From positions 186,001-250,000 of IMG/VR virus record IMGVR_UViG_3300005537_000001: DNA of 64,000 nucleotides, one strand, 5' to 3'. Made by a program: the position numbers and the translations under genes. The notes beneath the pieces were generated by a model. It saw nothing but the letters and a program-made list of their open reading frames with translations, had not been told where the DNA came from and ran no database searches. Position 1 is the first letter of the stretch, and every line of letters starts with the position of its first letter. This document shows positions 26,262 to 60,010 of the stretch, one piece after another.

Positions 26262-27962
26262 ATGAAAGTTATGTTTCGCAATAAGCAAGTCGGTGCAATC
26301 ACAAAACTCGGTATTGGAGTTTTGGCGGTTCTAGCTGGCGCTGTAGTCTTCGGTGGACTCTACGGTGTACAGCGGATTCACAAGAGCAACCTCGCAAACG
26401 GTTCGGCGTATGTGGCAAAGGGCACACCGACGAACAATGGCAGCGACGGCGCGACACCAGCGCAATCCGCTCCAACCGCGGCCCCAGTCGATTCGAATAC
26501 CTTGACGGTATCGATCGTGTCATTCCACGGTTACGCTCCAGCTATCCTCGCCAACGGTGGGTCGTTGAAGACTCAGCCCGGCTCGATCTACGCTAAGCTT
26601 GGTCTCAACCTGAACTTGGTCGTTCAAGACGATATTCCGACGCTGCAGACCGTCTTCACTTCGAAGACCGCGCAGTGCGCCTGGCGCACTTCTGACTTCT
26701 GGGCGCAGGAACAACCCAACCTTCGCAACGCGAAGCTTGACGCGCGAGCGGTGATGATCGTAGACAATACGCAAGGCGGTGACGCCATCGTCGCGCGCGA
26801 TCCCTCGGTGCGAACCGTCGAAGATCTTGCTGGCAAGAAAGTAGCTCTGCTGCAGTTCACGCCGTCGCATGGTCTTTTGATCGACGCGATCAACAACAGC
26901 TCCCTGTCTGCCAAGAAGAAGTCATCCATCCAGATGGTCTTCATCAACGCCGATGAGGGAACGGCTGGTGTTCGAGCCGCCTTCGAAAGTGGAAAGGTCG
27001 ACGCGATCGTGCTGTGGGATCCGGATCTCTCCTTGGCGATGCGTCAGCCCGGTTCTCACGTCGTGTACTCCACCAAGCAAGCCACCAACCTCATCTACGA
27101 CGTGATGGTTTGCAACAAGGAAGTTATCGACAGCCAGCAGGGTCATACCGCGGTGCAGAAGTTCGTGCAGGGCTGGTTGGCCGGAGTAGATTATGCCCGC
27201 GTTCACCAAGATGAAGCTGTATCGGCACTAGCCAGCTCCGAGCAGATGTTCGGCGCGATTCGAGATAAAGAAGGTCCCTCCTTCATCAAGGGTCTCTTCA
27301 CTAACCTCGTGTGGACGAACCTTTCGGATAACGCTCGCATCCTCGGTTTGATCGCCGGCGGCACGAACCACTACGAGCGCGTGTATCATGAGTTCGACCA
27401 GATCTACCGTGAGGCCGGCGCTCTTGCTAATCCTAATTCACCGGTGATCAACGCGTCTGATTCCTTCGACTACAGCTTCGTGAAGACCCTGCTCGCCCGC
27501 GACGCGTCAGCTCAACAAGCGGCCACCGTCGAGAAGACAAGCTTCACCACCAGCGGTGCGACCGTCGCTCAGTCTTCAGTAGCGTCCCTAACGAAGCCGG
27601 TCTCGGTCAACTTTGGAACGGGTTCAGCTGAGCTCACCAAGAAGGGACAGGAAGTTATCGACAAGCAAATCGTCCCCTTCCTCGAGGACAATGGCACGGC
27701 ATACATTGAGCTCAGCGGCAACGCGGACTCGACTGGTAGCGACGCGGTCAACCGCCCGCTCTCCCTGGCACGCGCCAACGCGGCGAAGAAGTACCTTGTT
27801 GAGCAGTGGGAAATCCCAGCCGCTCGCTTGGTCGTAGCTGGCAACGGTTCAAGCAAGCCCATCTGCCGCGAGCCGGGTACTGAAGATGGTTTGAGCCTCG
27901 AAGATTGCCGCGCCGCAAACCGCGCAACTCGCGTAGCGATTCTGCAGTCAGCATCGAAGTAA
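26262..27962 (+). CDS. ABC substrate-binding protein (NitT/TauT/SsuA-like) fused to an OmpA-like peptidoglycan-binding domain
   Basis: N-terminal TM anchor; DLAGKKVA, GKVDAIVLWDP; C-terminal SGNADSTG..N..LS.ARA...G.G...P..NRATRV. Confidence 0.85.
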   Translation: MKVMFRNKQVGAITKLGIGVLAVLAGAVVFGGLYGVQRIHKSNLANGSAYVAKGTPTNNGSDGATPAQSAPTAAPVDSNTLTVSIVSFHGYAPAILANGGSLKTQPGSIYAKLGLNLNLVVQDDIPTLQTVFTSKTAQCAWRTSDFWAQEQPNLRNAKLDARAVMIVDNTQGGDAIVARDPSVRTVEDLAGKKVALLQFTPSHGLLIDAINNSSLSAKKKSSIQMVFINADEGTAGVRAAFESGKVDAIVLWDPDLSLAMRQPGSHVVYSTKQATNLIYDVMVCNKEVIDSQQGHTAVQKFVQGWLAGVDYARVHQDEAVSALASSEQMFGAIRDKEGPSFIKGLFTNLVWTNLSDNARILGLIAGGTNHYERVYHEFDQIYREAGALANPNSPVINASDSFDYSFVKTLLARDASAQQAATVEKTSFTTSGATVAQSSVASLTKPVSVNFGTGSAELTKKGQEVIDKQIVPFLEDNGTAYIELSGNADSTGSDAVNRPLSLARANAAKKYLVEQWEIPAARLVVAGNGSSKPICREPGTEDGLSLEDCRAANRATRVAILQSASK

Positions 27963-27976
27963 GCTGTAACGAATGC

Positions 27977-28003
27977 GGGAGAGTAGGACTGTCCTACTCT
28001 CCC
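27977..28003 (+). promoter_or_regulatory. intercistronic stem-loop, probable mRNA stabiliser or attenuator
   Basis: GGGAGAGTAGGAC-T-GTCCTACTCTCCC inverted repeat with no U-tract. Confidence 0.7.
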
Positions 28004-28027
28004 AGCTTCTAACCTGGAGATTTCAGC

Positions 28028-28828
28028 ATGAGCAGCAACTTTTTCAACCCCCACGCCCCACTAACCGGTCTTCAGCGGGAAGAATATGGAATCGGAGCTA
28101 TCTTCGCCCTCATCACGGTGTGGGCAGGTATCACGATGTTGGATTTGGTTGACGCAAACAAGCTTCCATCTCCAATTCAAGTTTTCAACGCTTTCCTGTA
28201 TCTCTCATGGGATCATGGACACAGCATTCTTCTTGGGGCTATGGGCGCAAGCCTTACGCGCATCGGTATCGCGGCTCTCCTCGTATGCGCCGTTGGTATC
28301 CCATTTGGAATAATCCTTGGAGCTTCACCGCGGCTTAATTCAATCTTCTCGCCGATTATCGATCCTTTCCGCTCAGCTCCAATCGCCGCTCTGCTGCCGA
28401 TATTCGTGATGTGGTATGGAATTGGTGATGGCATGAAGATCGCATTCCTCTTCACCGCTGCAGTCGTTTACATCATACCGATGGTTAGAGACGCGATGCT
28501 TGGAGTAGCTTACTGCTACTGGGAAGCGACGGCGGATCTCAGCGCAACGCCCATCGAAAACATCCTGAAGGGAGTGCTGCCGATAGCGATGCCCAGAATT
28601 TTTGACGCGATCATCGTGTCAACGTCAATCCTCTGGACGTACATAACCGTCGCAGAATATGTCAACGCCGACAGTGGTCTAGGACAGATGATTCAAAACG
28701 CGAAGCGCTTCAGCGCGATGGATCAAGTCTTTGCTGGCATCATCGTGATTATCGGATTAGCGCTGCTGACAAACTTGACGCTAACGTACGTCAAGAAGCG
28801 CATTTACTTTTGGGAAGGAACGCAGTGA
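28028..28828 (+). CDS. ABC transporter permease (SsuC/TauC-like)
   Basis: LPSP, SLTRI, PIAALLPIFVMWYGIG, EAA-like loop, VAEY...SGLG. Confidence 0.9.
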   Translation: MSSNFFNPHAPLTGLQREEYGIGAIFALITVWAGITMLDLVDANKLPSPIQVFNAFLYLSWDHGHSILLGAMGASLTRIGIAALLVCAVGIPFGIILGASPRLNSIFSPIIDPFRSAPIAALLPIFVMWYGIGDGMKIAFLFTAAVVYIIPMVRDAMLGVAYCYWEATADLSATPIENILKGVLPIAMPRIFDAIIVSTSILWTYITVAEYVNADSGLGQMIQNAKRFSAMDQVFAGIIVIIGLALLTNLTLTYVKKRIYFWEGTQ

Positions 28829-29373
28829 CAAAGATCATCAACCTCTACGGTGGTCCAGGGACTGGAAAGTCAACAACCGCCGCGGCTCTCTTCGCGGAGC
28901 TCAAGTATCGAGGAGTCAACTGCGAATATGTTCAGGAGTACGCGAAGGACAAGGCTTGGGAGTTCGGCACGAATCATCTCGGTACCCCCAAGGTGTTTCA
29001 AGCTCAGGAATACATCTTTGGAAAGCAGCACTTTAGACTGCGAAGGTGCGCTGAAGATGTCGATGTGATCGTGACGGACTGCCCGTTGTTCCTAGGTTTG
29101 ATTTACATGCCGAAGAACTTTGGTATTCCTTCTCTGAAGAATTGTATTCGCGAGGCTTACGATTTGTACGACAACTTGAATATCTTTTTGGTACGTCATA
29201 AGGAGTACAATCCCAAGGGTCGATTTCAGTCGGAAGAGCAAGCGAAAGACCTCGATGTAAAGGTCAAACAGATGTTGACAAATCAAGCTGTTCCTTTCCA
29301 CGTCGTTGATTCTGATAGAACTGCTGTTGGTGCGATCATTGCGAAGGCTAACGAATGGGGGTGGAAACTATGA
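28825..29373 (+). CDS. NadR/AAA_28-like P-loop kinase
   Basis: INLYGGPGTGKST, EYAKD, VIVTDCP; GTGA overlap. Confidence 0.75.
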   Translation: MTKIINLYGGPGTGKSTTAAALFAELKYRGVNCEYVQEYAKDKAWEFGTNHLGTPKVFQAQEYIFGKQHFRLRRCAEDVDVIVTDCPLFLGLIYMPKNFGIPSLKNCIREAYDLYDNLNIFLVRHKEYNPKGRFQSEEQAKDLDVKVKQMLTNQAVPFHVVDSDRTAVGAIIAKANEWGWKL

Positions 29374-30146
29374 GCGCTACTATTCTCGAATTGAGCGGTG
29401 TTGTCCAGGAATACCCGGATCCACAAAATCATGGTCAAGTAAACCGCATTTTGGATCCACTTACATTGACTTTAGCTGGTCCATCGATCAACGTCATCAT
29501 GGGACGTAGCGGATGCGGAAAGTCGACCGTGCTACGAATGCTAGGCGGTGTTCGACCACCAAAGGTGAAGACGCCAACGCTCGGCACGATCAAGCTTGAT
29601 GGTGTTGAGCTCCACGGCAAGTCCCAAGATGCAGTTACCGTTTTTCAGCAGCCAGTTAACCGTCCAGATCTGACGGTAAAGAAGAACATTGAGTTCCCAT
29701 TCAAGGTTGGCCCGCGGCGCGGCGCGGCTAAGGCTGAAATCGCCCAGCGAGTTGAAGAGGCGATGATAGCCGTCAGCTTGAAGGACAAGGAGTCCCACTA
29801 TCCCAGCGAGCTGAGCGGTGGACAGAACCAGCGCGTCATGCTTGCCCGTGGGTTGGTGACCAAGCCGAAGATTCTTCTGCTTGATGAGCCGTTCAGCGCG
29901 CTCGATCCCATCCTTCGCGTCGACATGCAGAAGCTTCTCGTTGACATCTGGGCGAAGCATCCTTGCTTGGTAGTGATGGTGACCCACGACGTGGGTGAGG
30001 CTATCGCGGTTGCCGACCGCATCATCGTGCTGAACGGCAAACCAGCAAAGATTGCCCTCGATCATTCGGCTGCAGGTGCTCGCGCGCAGGCACTTCGTCC
30101 AGAAGATGCTATTCTCCACAATCAAATTTCACAGGCGCTAAAATGA
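29370..30146 (+). CDS. ABC transporter ATP-binding protein (SsuB/TauB-like)
   Basis: GRSGCGKST, VFQ, LSGGQNQR, LLLDEPFSALD, VTHD. Confidence 0.95.
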   Translation: MSATILELSGVVQEYPDPQNHGQVNRILDPLTLTLAGPSINVIMGRSGCGKSTVLRMLGGVRPPKVKTPTLGTIKLDGVELHGKSQDAVTVFQQPVNRPDLTVKKNIEFPFKVGPRRGAAKAEIAQRVEEAMIAVSLKDKESHYPSELSGGQNQRVMLARGLVTKPKILLLDEPFSALDPILRVDMQKLLVDIWAKHPCLVVMVTHDVGEAIAVADRIIVLNGKPAKIALDHSAAGARAQALRPEDAILHNQISQALK

Positions 30147-42569: not shown

Positions 42570-43529
42570 ATGAATGACAAGAAGCTAGGTGCCATCTACG
42601 GCGCCCTTATCGGCGACGCCACTGGCTGTCCCTACGAATTCAACAGCCCTGAAAAGCTACCCCATCCCGACGAGATCGACATGTTTCCTCCGTCATGGTG
42701 GGAGTGCGCGTATCCCAACGTAAAGCTTGGGACCTACACCGACGATGGAGCTCAAACCCTCTGCCTGCTCGAGTCCCTCATCGAGGGAGGAGACCTCATC
42801 ACGGTGCTTCGAACGAAGCTGCAGAAGTGGCTGCACGAAGGCTACATGGCGGTTGACAGCTACGTGTTCGACGTGGGTAGCCAAACTCGCGCCGCGCTGC
42901 TAACGAAAGATCACACGAAGGTCTTTGCCGAAGAAGCTTCAAACGGTAACGGCGCGCTGATGCGCTGCATTCCTGTCGCGGTAATGGCTCAGTCAGAAGA
43001 TTACGCGATCACCATCGCGATGGAACAAGCCAAGGCTACCCACCCCCACATGTGGTCCCAGCTGACGTGCGCGGCATATGCCCTCATCGGATATTGGATG
43101 ATACGCGGTCACAAGATCACGATATCCGATTGCGTTGGGGCTCCAGTGGAGCAGGTGGTCAGCGACGCTGAATCGCTCATCATTCCAGCCTTCAGCCTGC
43201 TGCAGCGCAAGTTCCCAGAACATCGTCAGCACCTCGCATACATCTATAACTACCGCTATACCGAACCAACCGGCACCGGCTTCGTCGTTGATGCCTTCTG
43301 GTCGGCGCTCTTCGCGCTTCGAGTCGGTGATACGTATGAGAAGGTGATAAAGAGAGCCATCGAGCTTGGGCACGATACCGATACTACCGCGTGCATCGCC
43401 GGCGGGTTGGCAGGCATCAAGTTTGGAATGGCAGGAATACCGCGAAGGTGGATTGATGGACTGCGCGGTAGGGAGCTAATCGATTCGCTAGCGGCACGTG
43501 CGTCCCTCGGAGTAGAGGTCAACGAGTAG
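42570..43529 (+). CDS. ADP-ribosylglycohydrolase (DraG/ARH family)
   Basis: GALIGDATG, GTYTDDG, SNGNGALMR, TH, GHDTDTTACIAGGLAG. Confidence 0.92.
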   Translation: MNDKKLGAIYGALIGDATGCPYEFNSPEKLPHPDEIDMFPPSWWECAYPNVKLGTYTDDGAQTLCLLESLIEGGDLITVLRTKLQKWLHEGYMAVDSYVFDVGSQTRAALLTKDHTKVFAEEASNGNGALMRCIPVAVMAQSEDYAITIAMEQAKATHPHMWSQLTCAAYALIGYWMIRGHKITISDCVGAPVEQVVSDAESLIIPAFSLLQRKFPEHRQHLAYIYNYRYTEPTGTGFVVDAFWSALFALRVGDTYEKVIKRAIELGHDTDTTACIAGGLAGIKFGMAGIPRRWIDGLRGRELIDSLAARASLGVEVNE

Positions 43530-44068: not shown

Positions 44069-45779
44069 ATGAGCAAGACGCTGCTTGAACGATTGGAGAC
44101 TGTTGGTCCACTCTGTGCCGAAGCGGCCAAACACGTGCGAACGTTGGAATCGTATCTTGCTAGAACAGGTGCTGATTTCTTTATCGAAACTAAACCGACC
44201 GACGAGGAACTAGCTGAAGCTATCAGATGCGCCGCCGCCCATGGAGAAAAGCTGATAGCCGAGCTGAATCGACGAAAGGGATACACGACCCACTCGGCAG
44301 GTTCACTCGACAAGAACTGCATCTGCTACGGTAACTGGAGAAAGATAGTAGCCGATACTGAACACCTGCTGGACAAGGAGTTCGTTCGCGACTACGATGG
44401 TAAGATATACAGCTTCACCGGCGTGATGCACGGCTCGGATGATTTCTACTACGTAATGTGGAGCAAAGAGCGTACCATCTTCAGTTCTTGCGTTGGATCG
44501 CTCGAGACGAACGGTTTCACGCCGCTGGTGGTGGGCGGGTGAGCGTAGCCTACCTCATCACCGAATATTGGTACGACGCTCTCGAGAATCGCAACTTCGA
44601 GGGCTACAGCTCCATCGGCATCATCTATGACAAGGCAGAGGCTGAAGCCTTCGTCAAGGCGGGTGGAGAGGTACCAGGAGACGGCATCCTTATCTACCCG
44701 TTGCTACCTAACGGTTGCTCGGATTTCAGCAAGCAACCGACATTAGGTCGTCAGATGAACGCGCGTTATCACGCGCACGAACTGCCGATCATCAATTAAC
44801 CGCGCGGTGAATCATGAGCAACAAGCTTACGAAGGAAGAACGCATCGAGTGCCTGCAGCTCCTCATCGACAACATCGATAAGCATGACCGCAACATGGTT
44901 CTCTACGTCGAGAAGGTCGCGTATGAGCTAGCGATAGTTGAAAACAAGATGGTTGGCATGAGCGAGTTAGAGATGCGCAAGTTTCTCGGGCTCTATTACG
45001 AGGGACGTGAGAAGGACTACGACGCTGGCATCTATTATGAATCTGAGCAGTTCGATCACTACACCATCTACGAAAATGGGCAAGTCAAGGATGAGAGCTT
45101 TAACCAAGTTATGGATGGCTCGTCGATTCGGGTTTCACTGGTAGACGGCAAGGTGTACAAGGTTGGGCTTGGTGCTGGTCGATTGATATACGCGAGAGAC
45201 AAGGTACCCAAGGAGCTGCTACCGTGACCGAAGCTCAGTCATACGTCACTCCCTGGGTAACCGGTCATCGAATCGACTGCTCCATCCAGTCGCTGAGCCG
45301 CTACGCTAAAGCGCGCTGCAGCTGCTACGAGTTGAACAGCACGTGTCAGACATGTGGCCGCCGCCTTAATCCAGCTGACGCGACCGAAGGTAATCCAACT
45401 TGCGAGGGTCATGCGCGTGAAGCCTAACCGAATTCGCATCATGAACACAACCACGCTTGAGCACAACGGTGATCAGTGCATGGTCATCCGCATCGACATG
45501 GATGGCAGCTGCTCCGTCGGTTCAATCGAGCCTGGAGAAAGCTTCGAGATGAACCTGCCATATGGCAGCACTCTAACGGTTCGTGAGAGCGTCTCAGCAA
45601 TCCACACGAAGGGTCAACGGGTAACTGAGAATGGAATAACGAGAGCGCTGTATCCTACAAGGGAGCGACAGCCAAACGCGCCGCTCACCGACCCACACCC
45701 CTTCACTCCGCTGTTTGTTAACTGTCTAATCTGCAAGTTGTGCGGCAACGGACCAAACGTGGCGTTCCATAATGTTTAG
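44069..45779 (+). other. run of hypothetical CDS (44069-44542, 44539-44799, 44814-45227, 45224-45427, 45411-45779)
   Basis: Coupled plus-strand ORFs. Confidence 0.6.
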
Positions 45780-46728
45780 ATCAGACGCCCACAAGATTCT
45801 CGGCACCACCGACCAGATGTCCGATGAGGAGATCAAGAAGCGCTACCAGAAGCTGCGCTCGCTCTACCATCCCGACAAGAACCCTGGCAATGAAGCGGAA
45901 TCGAAGAAGAAGTTTGAGGCGGTGCAGGAAGCGAAGGACGTGCTGGACGGTAAGGTTAAGCAGCCACCTCCTAACTCCGGCTTTAGGCAGCAGCCCGGCG
46001 GCTTCAGCACGCACTACGTCAATCCAGAGGATCTCGCCGAGTTCCTCAAGAACTTCCAGCAGGCCTTCCACCCTGGGCCGGACAACCGACCGCGCCCAGA
46101 CAAGATAGACGACTACCAAGACAGCTGGGGTTCATCTGGCCCAGGAGCCCGCTCCCACGGTCCACAGGTACAGCAGCTGAACGCGGTCATCGTTATCTCC
46201 CTTGAGGAGGCCTTCAACGGCTGCACCAAGGAGATCAACATCCCAGTTCCAGGTGCCCTCGCGGCGCAGGAACCCCACAAGGTAGTCATACCGCGGGGCG
46301 CGTCAGAGTCGGACGTCGTCGCGGTAATCGAGAAGCCGACCCTCACAATCCGCTGCTTCATCCGTATCGCCCCGTCGGAGTACAAGGTGCAGTTCGCAAG
46401 CCCATTCAACGTCAATGGAGCTGGCAACGTCATCCGCGAGCAGAAGGTATCGCCCTTCCTGATGATGACAGGTGGCTTCATGGAGGTCAAGACCCTCGAC
46501 GGTACCATCAACGTGCGGGTGCCCGAAGGTCTTGAGGCAAACATGATGCTCAAGGTGCAGGGCAAGGGCTACTGGAAAGGATTCAGATCTACCGAGCGCG
46601 GCGACATGTTTCTACGAATGGTACCCGACATCAAGCCGATCAAGGACATACCGCTCGCCGAATACGCGCGGTTCACCCAGGTGGTAGACGAGTACCGCAA
46701 GGGACAGAAGGTGGATGAAAAGGTATGA
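45772..46728 (+). CDS. dnaJ: DnaJ-class co-chaperone (J domain, G/F-like linker, C-terminal domain, no Zn finger)
   Basis: IKKRYQKL...YHPDKNPG, ISLEEAFNG, VKTLDG, GKG...GDM. Confidence 0.9.
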   Translation: MFRSDAHKILGTTDQMSDEEIKKRYQKLRSLYHPDKNPGNEAESKKKFEAVQEAKDVLDGKVKQPPPNSGFRQQPGGFSTHYVNPEDLAEFLKNFQQAFHPGPDNRPRPDKIDDYQDSWGSSGPGARSHGPQVQQLNAVIVISLEEAFNGCTKEINIPVPGALAAQEPHKVVIPRGASESDVVAVIEKPTLTIRCFIRIAPSEYKVQFASPFNVNGAGNVIREQKVSPFLMMTGGFMEVKTLDGTINVRVPEGLEANMMLKVQGKGYWKGFRSTERGDMFLRMVPDIKPIKDIPLAEYARFTQVVDEYRKGQKVDEKV

Positions 46729-49114
46729 TTAACGCTACAGTCCTATTCGCTATCTTCTTCATCGCCATACCGGCCGTGGCCATCTTCGCCTCGAAGCGCG
46801 CTACCCGAAGGCGCGAGCGCGAAGAAGACGAAAGGCTCCGCGCCGAGAGAGCTCACGGCATTCTTGACGAGCTCGCGGTTGATTTCAACCCAGAGCTGGC
46901 CTTCAAGAGGGTGGCTGACCGTAGAGGTCTAACGGTAGAGCAGCTTCAGGAAGAGCTTCACGCCAGGGCTCAGTACGCGTCAGATCATCCCAACGAGTGC
47001 GTCTTCTGCAAGGTAACATCAGATCCCGTCCACTCGTTCGAATCATGTCCAGAGCTGAGGAGGCAACGTGACAACCGAGTTCAATGAGGAGTGGTGCCTG
47101 ACGATGGCGCGCCTTGAGGACAACGACAGCTGGAACCGAGCAGAAGCTATCAAGCGGGTTGCCGCCAAACACAACATTTCAGTCGAGGAGCTTGAAGCCG
47201 ACATCCGCCCGCGCCTGGCGTACACGACCGAGCGCGCCTACCTGGAGCTGCTCGATGGACCTGACGACACCTACCCACCCTGGAATCCCAACCTGCCAGC
47301 CAACCGCCAGGGACCCTTCGCGCTTCCTAAGAAGGAAGGCAGAGACTATATTTTTGGTGACTCACTCGCCGCGGTAAACCTGTCGAAGATGATCTACGAG
47401 AACCATCCCGAACAGTTCCGCCGGGTCGCCAGGGTGATGAACAACATCAACGCGCTGATCAAGAAGGGAGCCGCGGTTGAAGACGGCGGGCTCAGGTCAT
47501 GGCTGTACAAGGCGATCAGGAAGCACATCGCTGAATCCTTCGAGACCGTGGAGGTCAAGGCGGTCGCAACCCACGCGCGCAACGTGCTGATCAGCAACCT
47601 CCGCTCAGCCTTCAACCGGACGACAGCATGACCGGTCCACCCAGCTACAGTGATCCTGACGACCGCTTTGGACGGACCTGTCGGTGTGGCAACGCGCTGT
47701 ACCTGGAGATCGGCATCATTGAAAACCGCAACGGCATCCCGCACCTGAACAAGCAAAAGCATCCCTGCTTTCCCGGCAGCATCGAGATCGTTGAGTGCGC
47801 GGCCAAGTGCGGCTATTTTGCTCCAAGATACCGGAGGTACGATACGTGAAGCTTCTCTACAACCTGGTGATCTGCTTTCTAACGGCGGCCGCCATCTTCA
47901 TAACCTACAAGCTGGTAACTACATGATCCACAATCACGCGCAGCAGTTCCACCTCGGTCCAGCCGCGGTCATACTGCTCGTCATCGCGGCAGCCTTTCTA
48001 ATCCTACTGATCAAGGGATTTACGGACGATGAGTAGCGTACAGCGATCCGCCCCCAACCACCGTTCCCGCGGTCCGAATAGCTCAACTACCAACAACCTC
48101 TGGCACCGCCTGCACAAGAGGATAGCCGACAGGATGAGCAAGCAGCTGGAGAAGCTAAAATGAACAACGACTGGAACGACATCAAGTGGAACTGGTACCA
48201 CAAGCCACGAATGACCTTCGAGCGCTGGTGCAAGACAGATTCAACCTATGACCTGATAATATCAATCGCGACGGCGGTGCTGCTATTCGGCGCGATCATC
48301 GCAGGTCACTACCTGACGGCTGGTACCATAATCAGCTGCACCGCGGCTCTCGCCGGCATAACCTGTTACTTCAGGAGACATTACTGATGAGCTGGTACTA
48401 CTGTCCTGATGTGAACCGCAGCGTCTACGGGTGCTGCGCCTCGTGCAACTGCTCAAGAGGTAACGGTACCGCACCAGCTCCGCGAAAGAACCAGCGCCGC
48501 CCTACTACAAACATACCTACCTGCGGTACCGTTTATGCTAAAAGCAGTTCGACCGGCACCAACTGTCTAAAATTACCAGATCATCCAGGACCATGTGGAC
48601 CAACTCCACCGAGCTCAGGCATACCATTTAGAAGCGAAAGCGGCGACCTGTACCTGGTACCCGACCAACAGCAGATACTCGACTACAAGGCGGCGATCGA
48701 ACGCGGTGACGAACCGGCGATGCTACGCTTTGAAGAAGGTTGGACTGGTTGGGAAGCAATAACAGATGACTCAACGCCATGGTAACTAAAGAGCTAACCG
48801 AGGAAGAGATACGGCGGCAGATACAAGCTAAGGCTGTGGCAAGGCTGCTCAGCCCATATCAGGTTGAGCAGCTGGAGATAGTTCGCCGAATAGCTGAGCG
48901 AGGACTGATGGTAGCCCAGAAAGAAGGCAGCGGCCACTTCTGCGATCTGTTCACGCACCTGCTTGACAACCTGGTGCTGCTGCGCAAGGGAGATGCCTAT
49001 ACCGACGGCACACCATGGGCACTACCTGCTGTCGACCTGCAAACTAAGGAACCACCGTCCATTGCGGTTGGTTCCGCTACGCCCTTGTTGTGGGGTTCAG
49101 GACGCCTCCCTTGA
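46725..49114 (+). other. run of small hypothetical CDS (46725-47087, 47068-47631, 47628-47849, 47846-48036, 48160-48387, 48387-48785, 48779-49114)
   Basis: Coupled plus-strand ORFs; several have a TM segment or Cys pairs. Confidence 0.55.
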
Positions 49115-49128
49115 CCGGATTAATTGAC

Positions 49129-49644
49129 ATGGGTTATTCCGGGTTGCGGAAGATCATATCCGGCGGTCAAGTCGGTGTAGACCGGGGTGCCCTCGCTGCC
49201 GCCTTAGCTTTCGGTGTAGCAACGGGCGGCTGCGCGCCTCGTGGATGGCGAACGGTAACTGGCAGCGCACCAGAATTAGGTAGTTTGTATGGCTTGATAG
49301 AGCACGTTAGCCCAGAGTATCCCCCTCGAACCGAGGCGAACGTTCTCGCGGGCGACGGTACGCTGGTGATAGCTTCAGATCGCAACAGCGCGGGAACGGC
49401 GCTGACGATTCGCTACTGCTTGAAGCACTCGAAGCCGTACCAGCTGGTAGAGCCGCGGCGAACCGAAAGCTGGATAGCTCCGGTAAAGGAGCTCGCCGAG
49501 TGGATTATAAACCGGGAGATTGAAGTACTTAATGTAGCTGGTAACCACCGTGATGGAGCGTACCACGCGGACGTGACGATGGTGATCGTTAACCAGCTGT
49601 TCGTGGAGCTAGAGAAGCGTGATAGATTGGTTAAGAAGGATTAG
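49129..49644 (+). CDS. SLOG-superfamily protein (MoCo-carrier/DprA-like)
   Basis: IISGGQVGVDRGAL...TGG.AP.G...Y..RT..NV...DGTL...GT.LT...LNVAG. Confidence 0.8.
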   Translation: MGYSGLRKIISGGQVGVDRGALAAALAFGVATGGCAPRGWRTVTGSAPELGSLYGLIEHVSPEYPPRTEANVLAGDGTLVIASDRNSAGTALTIRYCLKHSKPYQLVEPRRTESWIAPVKELAEWIINREIEVLNVAGNHRDGAYHADVTMVIVNQLFVELEKRDRLVKKD

Positions 49645-55875: not shown

Positions 55876-56208
55876 TTAGTCACCGCCGGCAAGCGACTGC
55901 AGGGCGAGCAGCGTCAGCAGGTGGGCCCGGTCAAGTCGTCTAATCTTTCCAGCTTTGAGATCATCGTGCATCGCGTCCCGCGCCTTCCGAAGAAATATAA
56001 TCGCGTCGTGCAGCGGAGTGTTTCCACTTCGCCTCCCCTTGTCCAGCTTCTGCTTCTCAAGCCCGAGCTGCTGCCGCCACTTGTAGAGGGCGGAGTTCGG
56101 AATTTTAAGATTGTCAGCGATTACCTGTGGGCTCTCCTTCTTCATCCGCGCGACCGCCAACCGCTTGAACTTTTCGGTGTACGTCTTTCGCTTCTTCATT
56201 TTCTTCAT
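55876..56208 (-). CDS. helix-turn-helix protein resembling IS3 OrfA (HTH_Tnp_1)
   Basis: RKTYTEKFKRLAV...QVIADNLKI..SALYKWRQQ. Confidence 0.7.
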   Translation of the reverse strand: MKKMKKRKTYTEKFKRLAVARMKKESPQVIADNLKIPNSALYKWRQQLGLEKQKLDKGRRSGNTPLHDAIIFLRKARDAMHDDLKAGKIRRLDRAHLLTLLALQSLAGGD

Positions 56209-57314
56209 CGTCCTCGTCTCCGTGCTGGTGTTTCAACGTGGTCCATGCGGCTAGAGTACCTCGCTAGGTCGTCCCTCCGCTTCACTATCTCGGCGGGTCG
56301 CCGCTTTGCCCAGCTGTTCAAATTTGCTCGACACCTTTGACACGTGTCGAGCTTGCTCCGTGGGCTCAGCTCATCTCCGCAGTTCTTGATGACGCATCGT
56401 CTTACTGTCATGCGAATTATCCTGTTTGTTTGGGTTTTACTTCTTCAATCGTCAGCGCCGCGTCCAACTCCTGTCTCGGCAGCGTTCGACTCCAGAGCTC
56501 CGCCAGAAGTTCAGCGTGCCTCGCGGTCCGCCGCTTTATCTCTTCTGTTTCAAGCCGGAGATCTAGAATGAGCTCCTCCATCGTCATATCCTCAAGCTTA
56601 ACCATCTGCTCCCCTCCCCTTCGCGCCTTAGCGCTTGAACAAACCCCTGAAGCGCTGAATCATGGATTCAGACGCGTCTAGGTGTTCCTTAACCTCCATC
56701 TCGGATGGTTTAGGCTCTACAAGCTCAGCCGGCGGTTGGACTATGTCGGTCACCTTGATCTTCGTAGACGTATCTCCGCTCTTCTGATCTCCGCGCAGCT
56801 TGCGATCGATCCACTCAAAGTAGTTCATCCCGCGACCTCCCTATCGCTATCTTCATCGTTGCGCCGGAGCAGCTCCTCCATTTCCTCCGCCGTAACTATC
56901 ATCGCGCTTATCGAACTTTTGAAGCTGTCCAGCTGCTGCAGGCACTCCTGTACCGACTGTCGAAGGGCCTGAACCTCATACCACTTAGTCGCGGCGGGAT
57001 GTTCGGCAACCATCCGATTTATTAGCTTCTGGCAAGCTATGGTCATCTTTAGCACTTTCTCTTGTAGCATCTGTCGCTCCCTAATTTTGTGGGCGCTCTG
57101 GATCCTTCGAGGCGTTTCTAACGCCGGCAAAAAAACCAGAGATGTAAACCGTCAGCAGCAGCTCCTTCAGCAGCAGCTCCCTTTCAGGAACATCTTGACA
57201 GAAGAAACCAACCACCTCTGCCTTTTCCTTCATTATCGAATCGACGTGAAGAGATACTTCCTGGGTTTTCTCCTCTGGCGCCAACCGAATGGTATCTTCA
57301 GTCTGTATGATCAT
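56205..57314 (-). other. run of small CDS (56205-56411, 56417-56605, 56628-56828, 56825-57070, 57081-57314)
   Basis: RBS-led minus-strand ORFs. Confidence 0.6.
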
Positions 57315-57400
57315 GTGCTCACCCCAGCACCGAGGCAAGGTTGAAGCTGAAAAATTTCTTCATTGAAACTCCTAGTTGTTAAAGAACGTGAAACGTTCTA

Positions 57401-57429
57401 ATTATAACATGAACCTGGGCCAGGTTACA
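57401..57429 (-). promoter_or_regulatory. early promoter driving the leftward block
   Basis: TGTAAC-N17-TATAAT with TG extension on the minus strand. Confidence 0.75.
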
Positions 57430-57478
57430 TAGGAGGGAAAGTGCAGGTTGGAGGGTGGGATAATTGCCGGTTAGCGTG

Positions 57479-57484
57479 TAAATA
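57479..57484 (+). promoter_or_regulatory. late promoter TAAATA
   Basis: 29 nt before ATG 57514. Confidence 0.6.
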
Positions 57485-57513
57485 GTTGAACGCACGTTAG
57501 CTGGAAGTGAAAA

Positions 57514-57783
57514 ATGCTACTCAAAGATTTGCTTGTGTACGAAGAAACAAAGTCAGCTGCCGTCCACCCGCACACGGAAACTCTCTCCAAGCTAATTCAC
57601 GACATTCGAAATCCGCTCGGCGCGATCTTAACGACGAACCGGATGCTAGCTTCTGGTGTGTCTGACGAAAGTCTTTTCAAGTTTATTGAGCTACAGGATG
57701 TAGCGTGCCGGGAGATAAAAGAGCTGCTGCGGGTCGCGGCTGAAACCTTACCAGCTAAAGCTAATTGGCTGAAGAAAACCTAA
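57514..57783 (+). CDS. stand-alone histidine kinase dimerisation/phosphoacceptor (HisKA/DHp)-like protein
   Basis: LSKLIHDIRNPLGAI H-box, second helix, no ATPase domain. Confidence 0.75.
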   Translation: MLLKDLLVYEETKSAAVHPHTETLSKLIHDIRNPLGAILTTNRMLASGVSDESLFKFIELQDVACREIKELLRVAAETLPAKANWLKKT

Positions 57784-57796
57784 GCTGGAGCGTCAC

Positions 57797-58363
57797 GTGA
57801 ATTTACATCAACTTCTAGAAGCAGCAGCTCCAACATTTGATAATTTGACAGGTAAAGACATTGGGCTTCATCCACACATATTTGGGGCTCCATTCGTGGC
57901 TGTCAGGTGGAAGATAGGTGGAAATAATGGGCAAGCCCTCGTGGATTTCCCGGCTGGTAAGCCGCCCATCGTATCAACGCGCGGCGAAGATACAGAGCGA
58001 GCATTCATAGCAGCAAATAAAAGCCTACTGATAGATTTTGCAAGTAACCTACTGCTGCAGGCGGTCGCGCTAGGTACTGATTTCACAGGTGCCCGCGATC
58101 GCCCATCGAAATATAAACCGGTATCAAGTCAGGCCTTGGCGCGCGGAATTTTATCGTGGTACAAAACAGTTAACCATAAAATGATGACCAATCTGCTTGC
58201 GACAGTTAAGGCGGTGGGTGGTCATCTACCAGCTGACGTTGTAGCCGCTGTGGGAAAGAGCATTGGCGTTACTCGTGTCGTGGAGCTTAAAAAGCGAATC
58301 GCGTCAACTAAAGCTAGTCTTGCTAAAATGGAAGCCGAACTAGCGGAGCTGGAAGCAAAATAG
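57797..58363 (+). CDS. late hypothetical protein with shared helical module and coiled-coil tail
   Basis: MNLHQLLEAA; KAVGGHLPADVVAAVGKS. Confidence 0.7.
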   Translation: MNLHQLLEAAAPTFDNLTGKDIGLHPHIFGAPFVAVRWKIGGNNGQALVDFPAGKPPIVSTRGEDTERAFIAANKSLLIDFASNLLLQAVALGTDFTGARDRPSKYKPVSSQALARGILSWYKTVNHKMMTNLLATVKAVGGHLPADVVAAVGKSIGVTRVVELKKRIASTKASLAKMEAELAELEAK

Positions 58364-58441: not shown

Positions 58442-59549
58442 TCAGTCACGTGATTCTCCAAGCTTTGAGTTGTGCAGCTCTACGATGTGGTGAGCTATCT
58501 TTTGTCCAACGTTAAAGGCAACACCTTCTTGATTCTTGTACTCGACCCCAAAATCAGATCTACCTGGCTTTACCACAGCTGAGAAGATGCTGCCACCTCG
58601 AGCAACCCATTTCTCCTTGAGCAGATCGCTCATTTACCAATTCCAAGCTGATCACCGCAGCGGCAGTCGCTGAAAAATCCGCACTTGATGATGCAGATAC
58701 CGCGTGAGTCGTATTGCGGTAAGGTCGAAACCAACCACGTGGTGCTGCCGCATTCTGGACAGCTATCGGCGTCTTTCGTCCAAAGATGTCCGCACTTAAC
58801 GCACTGATTTTGCTTAATTGTCATTATGCATGCGCCACATCTTCACAAGCCCATCGATCTGGTCTTGTATTCGCTTGACGCAGAGGAGCTTCGCGTTTTT
58901 GTAGTGAGAGTTACCATTTACGAATCGCGGGATCCAAAAGTGGTGTTCATCCTCCCACACATACGCTAGCGACCACTCACCCTCTACTACGCTGTAATTT
59001 TCTTCAGTCGATTTAAGAGGATACGTGAACGTAAGTGGCTCGTTCAAAAATGCCATCATGATTTCGAATTGAACGAAGTGACCACCGCTACCCATGCGAT
59101 CAACAAAGTAGGCATCGCTTATCGCGAGAATGTGATCGAGGTCGATGTAGCGACCTATTAAATCTGAATGGTAGACTCTCATGCTTCTTTGTCCTTGTGC
59201 CAATTGCTCTCACGACACAATGGGCACTGAATGAATGGTGGATTCTGCAGTGGGAGTACTAGGTCGCTGTAGTTGTACGTGAAGATGCTCTTGCATCGCC
59301 CGCACTTCATCTTGTACAGCGTAGGAGGCCCGAGATTATCCTTAATGATGGTTACTGTCATTTTGCTGCTTTTCCTGTTCTACCATCAACGTCGCACCAG
59401 GGACAAATGTGCAGAGCGCCACGATCAGCTGTATCCTTACTCATCCCCCACTCACTTTGTAACTTTTCAGACCAAGCGTCCTTGAGAATTTGGATCAAGT
59501 GACCATATCCGATTCTATCCGCCAACTCGATGACTTGAGCTTCATTCAT
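58442..59549 (-). other. run of small CDS (58442-58633, 58630-58824 Zn ribbon, 58814-59182, 59179-59361 Zn ribbon, 59358-59549)
   Basis: ATGA-coupled minus-strand ORFs. Confidence 0.6.
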
Positions 59550-60010
59550 ACCGGTTGCACCAACCAATGTCGGCGGTCTTGAACGACGTCACGCTTAGCT
59601 TTCAAAAAGACATACGCTGCGTCCAAATCTGGTTGTAAACCATTCTTGACCATCCACGTGGCTAGAGTGAGCGGGCTGCGCTCAACTCCACCAAGACAGT
59701 GAATCAAGAGTGGTCTGTAGCTGTCGTAGTAATCATCAAGAAGCAGGTGGGCAACTGCCAGCTTGCCTGGGTCAACAAGCCGCTTGCGCTGAATACGATT
59801 TATTTCTTCCTCAGCTCCCTGCGTCGCGAAGTAATCTCCAATGACCAGTGGTACTTCCGGCTCTACGTTAAGGATAGGAACGTGGAATGTCGGCGTGTAG
59901 CCAGGAACTATATCCTCATGGACATAGAGGGTGTCCATCTTTGTCTGCTCACCAGCGAAGGTAGCATCCTTGATGTTGCCAAGGTAGATGCTGCGGATTA
60001 TGTTGTTCAC
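59546..60010 (-). CDS. dual-specificity/tyrosine protein phosphatase
   Basis: CX5R loop LIHCLGGVERS; IYLGN. Confidence 0.85.
   Translation of the reverse strand: MNNIIRSIYLGNIKDATFAGEQTKMDTLYVHEDIVPGYTPTFHVPILNVEPEVPLVIGDYFATQGAEEEINRIQRKRLVDPGKLAVAHLLLDDYYDSYRPLLIHCLGGVERSPLTLATWMVKNGLQPDLDAAYVFLKAKRDVVQDRRHWLVQPV

What the first reader, a model, noticed from the sequence alone, without database searches (positions are those of the whole stretch)
57479..57783. Stand-alone HisKA/DHp domain with late promoter and cargo-like N-terminus: candidate two-component signalling decoy
This 89-aa protein has an intact H-box (IHDIRNPLGAI) and a two-helix hairpin, with no sensor, HATPase or receiver domain and no response regulator in the window. 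It could heterodimerise with a host kinase, act as a phosphate sink or phosphotransferase (ChpT/Spo0B-like), or dephosphorylate a regulator. If packaged, it would act immediately on injection.
Basis: partly seen in the sequence, partly recalled or inferred. Interest (0 to 1): 0.8.

Follow-up and report, generated by a model that had tools for sequence, protein, structure and literature searches.

The report
Phage gene: kinase phospho-acceptor hairpin alone
A 368-kb soil phage carries a small, intact gene for only the histidine-bearing helical hairpin of a bacterial sensor kinase, which most plausibly interferes with a host signalling pathway, but it has no known relatives and its function is untested.

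Summary
ORF 57514..57783 (+, 89 aa) is the coding frame and carries a canonical HisKA H-box (IHDIRNPLGAI, His29). The kinase and phosphatase motif H-D-x-x-N is complete. The predicted fold is a two-helix hairpin that superposes on the DHp of kinase HK853.

The Pfam HisKA match is below threshold (22.1 bits against a cutoff of 26.9, E 1.6e-4). Ten consecutive residues identical to a real kinase H-box, the ESM Atlas results and the fold searches make a kinase origin very likely.

No catalytic ATPase, receiver or sensor domain lies in the window, and no kinase remnants flank the gene. Three short HisKA-only database proteins I inspected were pieces of frameshifted kinase genes, so this gene differs from them. 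It is a singleton: no homologue in 5.8 billion protein clusters, 50,697 phage records or BFVD.

The "late promoter" claim is partly supported. TGTAAATA matches 7 of 8 bases of the T4 late consensus, and TAAATA is enriched upstream of genes. The "cargo-like N-terminus" is not supported, because those residues align with the kinase linker helix.

The function is inferred only. Candidates are a response-regulator phosphatase or sink, or poisoning of a host kinase dimer. Interest is moderate.

The parts
57315..57513 (.). Divergent intergenic region between a minus-strand block of small genes (ending at 57314) and the plus-strand two-gene unit
   Evidence: JGI gene calls mapped to window coordinates. 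No sigma-70-type promoter was predicted here.
57477..57484 (+). TGTAAATA, a 7-of-8 match to the T4-type late promoter TATAAATA, 35 nt before the start codon; a candidate promoter of unproven timing class
   Evidence: 11 of 17 TAAATA copies are intergenic, and intergenic DNA is 9.6% of the window. 8 of 43 genes with a free upstream region carry it 29-49 nt before the start, against 1.28 expected; no shuffle out of 5000 reached this. The exact TATAAATA is absent from the window but present upstream of the 905-aa gene in L001.
57503..57507 (+). GGAAG ribosome-binding-like site, 6 nt before the ATG
   Evidence: Read from the sequence. The downstream gene has the similar AGCTGGAG before its GTG.
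57514..57783 (+). CDS, 89 aa: stand-alone HisKA-type DHp (dimerisation and histidine-phosphotransfer) domain
57595..57627 (+). H-box IHDIRNPLGAI: His29 (57598-57600), Asp30 (kinase acid), Asn33 (phosphatase residue), Pro34
   Evidence: H29, R32, N33, P34 and L35 are invariant in the alignment with seven bona fide kinases. The motif H-E/D-x-x-T/N is defined in PMC3510030.
57568..57747 (+). Predicted helical hairpin: alpha1 residues 19-46, loop 47-50, alpha2 residues 51-78
   Evidence: AlphaFold2. Foldseek top hits are HK853 DHp, rmsd 1.1-1.7 A over 56 columns. All ten ESM Atlas structure hits are HisKA proteins, TM 0.66-0.73.
57797..58363 (+). Downstream gene, 188 aa, starting 13 nt after the stop; probably co-transcribed; function unknown; not a kinase catalytic domain
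   Evidence: No Pfam, PHROG, NCBIfam or PADLOC match. No match to a kinase CA-domain HMM. A weak DarA_N-like lead only, score 0.74. AlphaFold2 pLDDT 61, with a long C-terminal helix at 146-187.

Best explanation
The gene encodes a soluble 10-kDa protein that is only the DHp domain of a HisKA-family sensor kinase. It has the phospho-acceptor helix with its H-box, a short loop and the second helix. It was derived long ago from a cellular kinase gene and is kept by a 368-kb T4-related jumbo phage as an independent, translated gene.

It has no ATP-binding domain, so it cannot phosphorylate itself. The most likely action is interference with a host two-component pathway during infection. As a homodimeric four-helix bundle it would dock the cognate response regulator. 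It would then either dephosphorylate it through Asn33, the HisKA phosphatase residue, or take the phosphoryl group back onto His29 as a sink. Either route switches the pathway off.

Alternatively, or in addition, it could pair with the DHp of the host kinase and block autophosphorylation.

Shown here: gene integrity, the coding frame, a kinase-derived H-box with all catalytic residues, a hairpin fold, and the absence of a CA, receiver or sensor domain in cis or nearby. Inferred only: dimerisation, the target, and any phosphatase, sink or poisoning activity.
For: - The H-box is complete. HDIRNPLGAI is identical over 10 residues to a GAF-PAS kinase (L008), and H29, R32, N33, P34 and L35 are invariant across seven real kinases.
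- H-D-x-x-N fits the H-E/D-x-x-T/N motif. In that motif the T/N is required only for phosphatase activity and the E/D only for kinase activity (PMC3510030).
- That paper's reference list cites 'Phosphatase activity of histidine kinase EnvZ without kinase catalytic domain'. This is precedent that a DHp alone can dephosphorylate its regulator.
- The hairpin fold superposes on HK853 DHp from HK853-RR468 complexes. ChpT and DivL are also among the hits.
- ESM Atlas feature scores are 0.98-0.99 to HisKA clusters, and all ten structure hits are HisKA.
- The ORF is trimmed to the domain boundaries, has normal codon usage and a ribosome-binding site, and is tightly followed by a second gene.
- There are no flanking kinase remnants. 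Three of three inspected cellular short HisKA proteins were frameshift pieces lying next to HATPase_c.
- Phages are known to target host kinases with small early proteins. [quoted passage not shown]
- Natural inhibition between two sensor kinases is known for RetS and GacS (PMC12148439 abstract).
Against: - The gene is a singleton. There is no homologue in any phage or short-protein set, so purifying selection cannot be shown.
- The Pfam score is below the gathering threshold, and the second helix has lost the usual LLDxSR end. hhalign aligns only residues 16-56, and its templates were chosen by H-box, so the 98% probability is inflated.
- Pro19 breaks helix 1 ten residues above the His.
- The host and any target regulator are unknown.
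- Dimerisation could not be modelled with the tools at hand.
- 304 kb of the phage genome was not searched for a phage-encoded partner.
Confidence: 0.4

Rival explanations
1. It is a relic of a captured kinase gene: an open but functionless fragment that happens still to be translated or is merely still open, with no role in infection.
For: It is a singleton with no relatives in related jumbo phages. The HisKA score is sub-threshold and the end of helix 2 is degenerate. Jumbo phages carry many orphan small ORFs, and this one sits among arrays of them.
Against: The best cellular match is only 34-43% identical, so the capture is old. Even so, the ORF is intact and cut at the domain borders, and it has phage-like codon usage, a ribosome-binding site and a promoter-like element. 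The flanks hold no kinase debris. Every catalytic H-box residue is retained.
Confidence: 0.2
2. It is a phosphotransfer shuttle or one half of a split kinase. His29 would be phosphorylated in trans by a CA domain, host or phage-encoded elsewhere in the genome, or by a phosphorylated receiver. It would pass the phosphoryl group on, like Spo0B or ChpT, to activate rather than silence a regulator.
For: His29 and Asp30 are both kept. ChpT (4fmt, 4fpp) is among the structural neighbours, TM 0.60. From my own recall, not checked here: isolated EnvZ domain A can be phosphorylated in trans by domain B (Park, Saha and Inouye 1998). RedE accepts phosphate from a receiver onto its His (PMC2755868).
Against: No CA or receiver domain lies in the window or in the next 3.8 kb. 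Spo0B, ChpT and RedE all keep a CA-like domain, and this protein has none. The downstream 188-aa protein shows no ATPase features.
Confidence: 0.15
3. It is a helical hairpin repurposed for something unrelated to phosphotransfer, for example a coiled-coil adaptor that works with the 188-aa neighbour. The H-box would then be an inherited but idle feature.
For: The gene is tightly coupled to a gene whose product ends in a 40-residue helix. Helical hairpins are generic: the Foldseek E-values are all above 0.1, and encapsulated ferritins and designed bundles score similarly.
Against: An idle H-box would not be expected to stay identical over 10 residues to working kinases at this overall divergence. 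The ESM Atlas places the protein with HisKA by both sequence features and structure.
Confidence: 0.15

Closest known systems
HisKA (PF00512) DHp domain of sensor histidine kinases, e.g. Thermotoga HK853 and E. coli EnvZ domain A
   Same: It has the H-box with H-D-x-x-N-P, the alpha1-loop-alpha2 hairpin, and a length matching the isolated domain. It superposes on HK853 DHp at 1.1-1.7 A over 56 columns.
   Different: It is encoded alone, by a phage, with no sensor or CA domain. It scores below the Pfam threshold. The end of helix 2 lacks the usual LLDxSR, and helix 1 is interrupted by Pro19 above the His.
Spo0B / ChpT histidine phosphotransferases
   Same: These are DHp-type helical hairpins with a phospho-accepting His and no autokinase activity. 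ChpT is a structural neighbour.
   Different: They retain a C-terminal CA-like domain and sit in defined relays between receiver proteins. Here there is neither the domain nor any receiver nearby.
Phage LSL4 PIT4, a small early phage protein that binds host histidine-kinase domains (PMC10714779)
   Same: It is a small phage protein proposed to act on host two-component systems.
   Different: PIT4 (131 aa) has no conserved domain, and its function is shown by experiment. The present protein is itself a kinase domain, and its function is only inferred.
RetS-GacS inhibition between sensor kinases in Pseudomonas (PMC12148439 abstract; DHp-DHp pairing from my own recall)
   Same: A kinase-family protein silences another kinase by direct interaction rather than by signalling to its own regulator.
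   Different: RetS is a full multi-domain membrane kinase of the same cell, not an 89-aa viral protein.
Short HisKA-only proteins in genome and metagenome databases
   Same: They have the same length class and the same Pfam domain (203 hits).
   Different: All three inspected are artefactual or pseudogene pieces of frameshifted kinases, flanked by dCache, REC and HATPase_c ORFs on the same strand. The phage gene has no such flanks.

Membership tests
HisKA DHp domain (Pfam PF00512) | Profile match at or above the curated gathering score | tested here: not met
   22.1 bits against a cutoff of 26.9; E 1.6e-4; profile positions 4-50 of 66. Real kinases with the same H-box score 43-62 bits.
HisKA DHp domain (Pfam PF00512) | H-box with the phospho-acceptor His in the motif H-E/D-x-x-T/N-P | tested here: met
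   H29-D30-I31-R32-N33-P34. H, R, N, P and L are invariant against seven kinases. The motif definition is from PMC3510030.
HisKA DHp domain (Pfam PF00512) | Antiparallel two-helix hairpin | tested here: met
   Prediction only. Helices 19-46 and 51-78. HK853 DHp is the top Foldseek hit, with insignificant E-values of about 0.3 as expected for a hairpin. 10 of 10 ESM Atlas structure hits are HisKA.
HisKA DHp domain (Pfam PF00512) | Homodimeric four-helix bundle; phosphorylation on the His | not testable with these tools
   No multimer prediction or biochemistry was available.
Sensor histidine kinase (complete transmitter) | HATPase_c catalytic domain in the same protein or in an adjacent ORF | tested here: not met
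   The protein ends about 10 residues after helix 2. There is no CA match in any six-frame ORF of the window or by Pfam. tblastn with the full kinase P0002 hits only the DHp ORF.
Spo0B / ChpT phosphotransferases | DHp-like hairpin plus a C-terminal CA-like alpha/beta domain, working between two receiver proteins | tested here: not met
   89 aa, hairpin only. No receiver domain in the window.
HPt domain (PF01627) phosphotransfer proteins | Profile match to the monomeric four-helix HPt domain | tested here: not met
   No Hpt hit at E up to 1.
Spo0E-type aspartyl-phosphate phosphatases | Helical hairpin carrying the SQELD motif (motif recalled from memory); Pfam Spo0E match | tested here: not met
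   No such motif in the sequence and no Pfam hit at E up to 1.
T4-type late promoter | TATAAATA about 10 bp upstream of the transcript start; dependence on a phage late sigma factor | tested here: inconclusive
   TGTAAATA matches 7 of 8 bases. The hexamer is enriched upstream of genes. The exact octamer lies upstream of the 905-aa gene in L001. Timing and sigma dependence cannot be tested here.

The most novel reading that the evidence does not exclude
The phage uses a kinase-derived DHp as a counter-defence or takeover factor. It would drain or block phosphotransfer in a host two-component pathway that matters for infection. That pathway could be an envelope-stress or receptor-regulating system, or a defensive two-component system of the Detocs type, in which kinase-to-receiver phosphotransfer triggers ATP degradation (bioRxiv 10.1101/2023.01.24.525353). 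This would be the first viral protein that mimics the phospho-acceptor domain itself.
Probability: 0.08. Interest if true: 0.8.

Novelty: new variant of a known kind. Interest (0 to 1): 0.45.

Why it matters
Two-component systems control receptor expression, envelope stress responses and, in Detocs, immunity itself. Phage proteins that bind host kinases are known, but a phage-encoded copy of the phospho-acceptor domain would be a different route: molecular mimicry of the signalling hub. If active, an 89-residue natural DHp that silences a pathway would also be a compact tool for probing or switching off specific two-component systems. If inactive, it is an example of how jumbo phages hold on to trimmed fragments of host genes.

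Tried and rejected
- Homologue searches found only the protein itself or one marginal kinase hit. These were word-indexed, exhaustive phmmer, phage tblastn at E up to 0.01 and up to 10, IMG/VR pattern scans with this protein and its neighbour, and BFVD Foldseek.
- PDB sequence search: nothing significant. The best kinase hit was the ERS1 DHp at E 0.75.
- PHROGs, NCBIfam and PADLOC gave nothing, or only weak kinase DHp hits at E 0.03-0.1.
- The idea that the 188-aa neighbour is a decayed catalytic domain was rejected.
- The idea that the two-gene unit is a bounded mobile cassette was rejected. There are only short chance repeats, no composition shift and no terminator.
- CAGGTT, the second most common upstream hexamer, showed no consistent position and was dropped.
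- A scan of viral contigs with a receiver-domain alignment, meant to look for a partner elsewhere in this phage, could not run because the alignment had no conserved stretch.
- Walking the remaining 304 kb of the contig was not attempted. Each look-up adds only 10 kb, and the cap would leave it incomplete.
- One literature search for isolated-DHp dominant negatives returned only irrelevant papers.

Full report
**What is there.** The window is part of a 368-kb metagenomic jumbo phage. It is JGI sample 3300005537, contig Ga0070730_10000005, also listed as IMGVR_UViG_3300005537_000001, and an identical ENA assembly exists. The window encodes T4-type topoisomerase II subunits, a gp30.3 homologue, thymidylate synthase, DnaJ and many orphan small genes. 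By the topoisomerase medium subunit, the nearest cultured relatives are Ralstonia phage RsoM2USA (48.7% identity) and the Xanthomonas phages BUDD, X1 and XacN1.

The finding's ORF is 57514..57783 on the plus strand and encodes 89 aa. It is the first gene of a two-gene plus-strand unit. The second gene, 57797..58363 (188 aa), starts 13 nt after the stop. The unit is wedged between two blocks of small minus-strand genes.

**Is it a gene?** The annotated frame has a codon-usage log-odds of +0.117, and the mean for small genes in the window is +0.108. The other five frames score -0.36 to -0.73. GGAAG lies 6 nt before the ATG. The protein is soluble (GRAVY -0.03, 10 kDa, no hydrophobic segment).

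**Is it a HisKA/DHp domain?**
- Pfam HisKA matches residues 22-68 to profile positions 4-50 of 66. The E-value is 1.6e-4 and the score 22.1 bits, below the gathering score of 26.9.
- The exhaustive search of 1.84 billion representatives gave one non-self hit at E 9.6e-4. It is a 403-aa PAS-HisKA-HATPase_c kinase, 43% identical over 46 residues that include the H-box.
- A pattern scan of 185,579 species genomes found six loci sharing HDIRNPLG. All six are complete kinases with HisKA scores of 43-60 bits plus HATPase_c. One of them (L008) is identical to the phage protein over HDIRNPLGAI.
- In the eight-sequence alignment, H29, R32, N33, P34 and L35 are invariant. The phage protein spans the linker helix, helix 1, the loop and helix 2, and stops about where the linker to the catalytic domain begins.
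- hhalign gives 98.2% probability. Its templates were selected by the H-box, so this is not independent evidence, and only residues 16-56 align.
- Independent support comes from the ESM Atlas. Feature scores are 0.98-0.99 to clusters carrying HisKA, and all ten structural neighbours are HisKA proteins with TM 0.66-0.73.
- AlphaFold2 predicts helices 19-46 and 51-78.
- In Foldseek the best PDB matches are HK853 DHp, at rmsd 1.1-1.7 A over 56 columns. ChpT, DivL and LvrB also appear. The E-values are near 0.3, as expected for a bare hairpin, and ferritin-like and designed hairpins score similarly.

I conclude that the H-box helix is certainly of kinase origin and that the whole protein is very probably a DHp hairpin. 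It is a divergent one: the end of helix 2 lacks the usual LLDxSR, and Pro19 interrupts helix 1 above the His.

**Stand-alone status.** No sensor, CA or receiver domain is present in the protein, in the neighbour or anywhere in the window.
- Pfam on 70 further ORFs of 95 aa or more found none among the 25 best-scoring of the 43 families listed (all with E 1.2e-4 or better).
- Local HMMs for receiver and kinase-type CA domains found nothing better than E 0.9 and 2.5 in 629 six-frame ORFs. The positive controls scored 1e-24 and 4e-34.
- tblastn with the complete kinase P0002 hits only the DHp ORF.

Short HisKA-only proteins are common in databases (203 hits). All three that I inspected on long contigs are pieces of frameshifted kinase genes, with dCache or REC ORFs before them and HATPase_c ORFs after. 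The phage gene is therefore different in kind from those.

**Uniqueness.** No homologue was found in 5.8 billion protein clusters, in 50,697 phage records even at E up to 10, in IMG/VR by pattern scan or in BFVD. Conservation, and hence selection, cannot be assessed.

- *Late promoter.* The finding's start, 57479, is a TAAATA hexamer. With the two preceding bases it reads TGTAAATA, a 7-of-8 match to the T4 late consensus TATAAATA. Eleven of the 17 TAAATA copies in the window are intergenic, and intergenic DNA is 9.6% of the window. Shuffles of the intergenic regions give a mean of 3.8, with P about 0.0015.
- Eight of 43 genes with a free upstream region carry the hexamer 29-49 nt before the start, against 1.28 expected. 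None of 5000 shuffles reached eight. The exact octamer is absent from the window but sits before a 905-aa fn3-containing gene just beyond its end.
- The element is therefore probably a real promoter feature of T4 type. 'Late' is unproven, because thymidylate synthase and an ADP-ribosylglycohydrolase carry the hexamer too.
- *Cargo-like N-terminus.* Residues 6-28 align with the helical linker preceding the H-box in kinases. Residues 1-18 are of low confidence, with a short helix. Nothing indicates a packaging signal, and this cannot be tested in silico.

**Mechanism.** For HisKA kinases the motif is H-E/D-x-x-T/N. The acidic residue is needed only for kinase activity and the T/N only for phosphatase activity (PMC3510030). 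The phage protein has H-D-I-R-N.

Without a CA domain it cannot autophosphorylate. A DHp alone can still bind its regulator. For EnvZ, a DHp alone also dephosphorylates the regulator. This rests on the title 'Phosphatase activity of histidine kinase EnvZ without kinase catalytic domain', cited in PMC3510030. The details are from my own knowledge.

My preferred reading is that the protein silences a host pathway, as a regulator phosphatase or phosphate sink or by pairing with the host kinase DHp. Precedents for the general strategy are phage PIT4 binding several host kinases (PMC10714779) and the RetS-GacS interaction (PMC12148439).

Every step beyond 'it is a DHp hairpin with intact catalytic residues and no partner nearby' is inference. 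The rivals are a functionless relic, a relay or split kinase with a partner elsewhere in the unexamined 304 kb, or a repurposed hairpin working with the 188-aa neighbour.

**Novelty and score.** The domain is among the best known in bacteria. What is unusual is its natural occurrence alone, as a phage gene. I found no report of this: a jumbo-phage comparative genomics survey mentions histidine kinases only to say that its divergent receiver domain is never linked to them (PMC7824862). I rate it a new variant of a known kind. Interest is 0.45, because the idea is attractive and testable but rests on a single orphan sequence with a sub-threshold domain score.

Noticed in passing
window 59546-60010 (-): A 154-aa protein with a canonical Cys-X5-Arg phosphatase loop (HCLGGVERS) and a sub-threshold DSPc match (E 2e-5, 24.8 bits against a cutoff of 33.5). 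It is a second candidate phospho-signalling gene, 1.8 kb from the DHp gene.
   Followed up: partly
window 26262-30146 (+): A phage-encoded ABC-importer-like cassette. It comprises a 566-aa NMT1/THI5-type binding protein fused to an OmpA domain (26262-27962), a BPD_transp_1 permease (28028-28828), an AAA_28 protein (28810-29373) and an ABC_tran ATPase (29355-30146).
   Followed up: partly
window 2318, 12972(-), 19281(-), 22034(-), 42521, 57479, 60780, 62491; L001 about 16665: TAAATA hexamers lie 29-49 nt upstream of eight gene starts, mostly as xATAAATA. The full T4 late consensus TATAAATA precedes the 905-aa fn3 gene just past the window. This suggests T4-type late transcription in this phage.
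   Followed up: partly
window 51292(-) and 52424(-): Two intergenic regions share a longer motif, GAGAAGGTGTCANGTCCAGGTTGTAC, 42-53 nt upstream of minus-strand genes. It is a possible second promoter or operator class.
   Followed up: no
window 57797-58363 (+): The 188-aa neighbour has no family match. The ESM Atlas gives a weak lead (0.74) to DarA_N-like 'defence against restriction' proteins, which in phage P1 are packaged head proteins (the P1 detail is from my own recall). The lead is too weak to use.
   Followed up: partly
window 42570-43529, 45772-46728, 49090-49644, 55876-56208(-): Other accessory genes: an ADP-ribosylglycohydrolase (E 2e-56), a full DnaJ (J domain plus C-terminal domain), a cpYpsA SLOG-family protein and an HTH_Tnp_1 protein.
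   Followed up: no
L011, L012, L013 (cellular contigs): Short 'HisKA-only' proteins in public protein sets are often pieces of frameshifted kinase genes: dCache|HisKA|HATPase_c, DUF4118|HisKA, and REC|HisKA|HATPase_c. This is a caution for anyone counting stand-alone DHp proteins from databases.
   Followed up: yes
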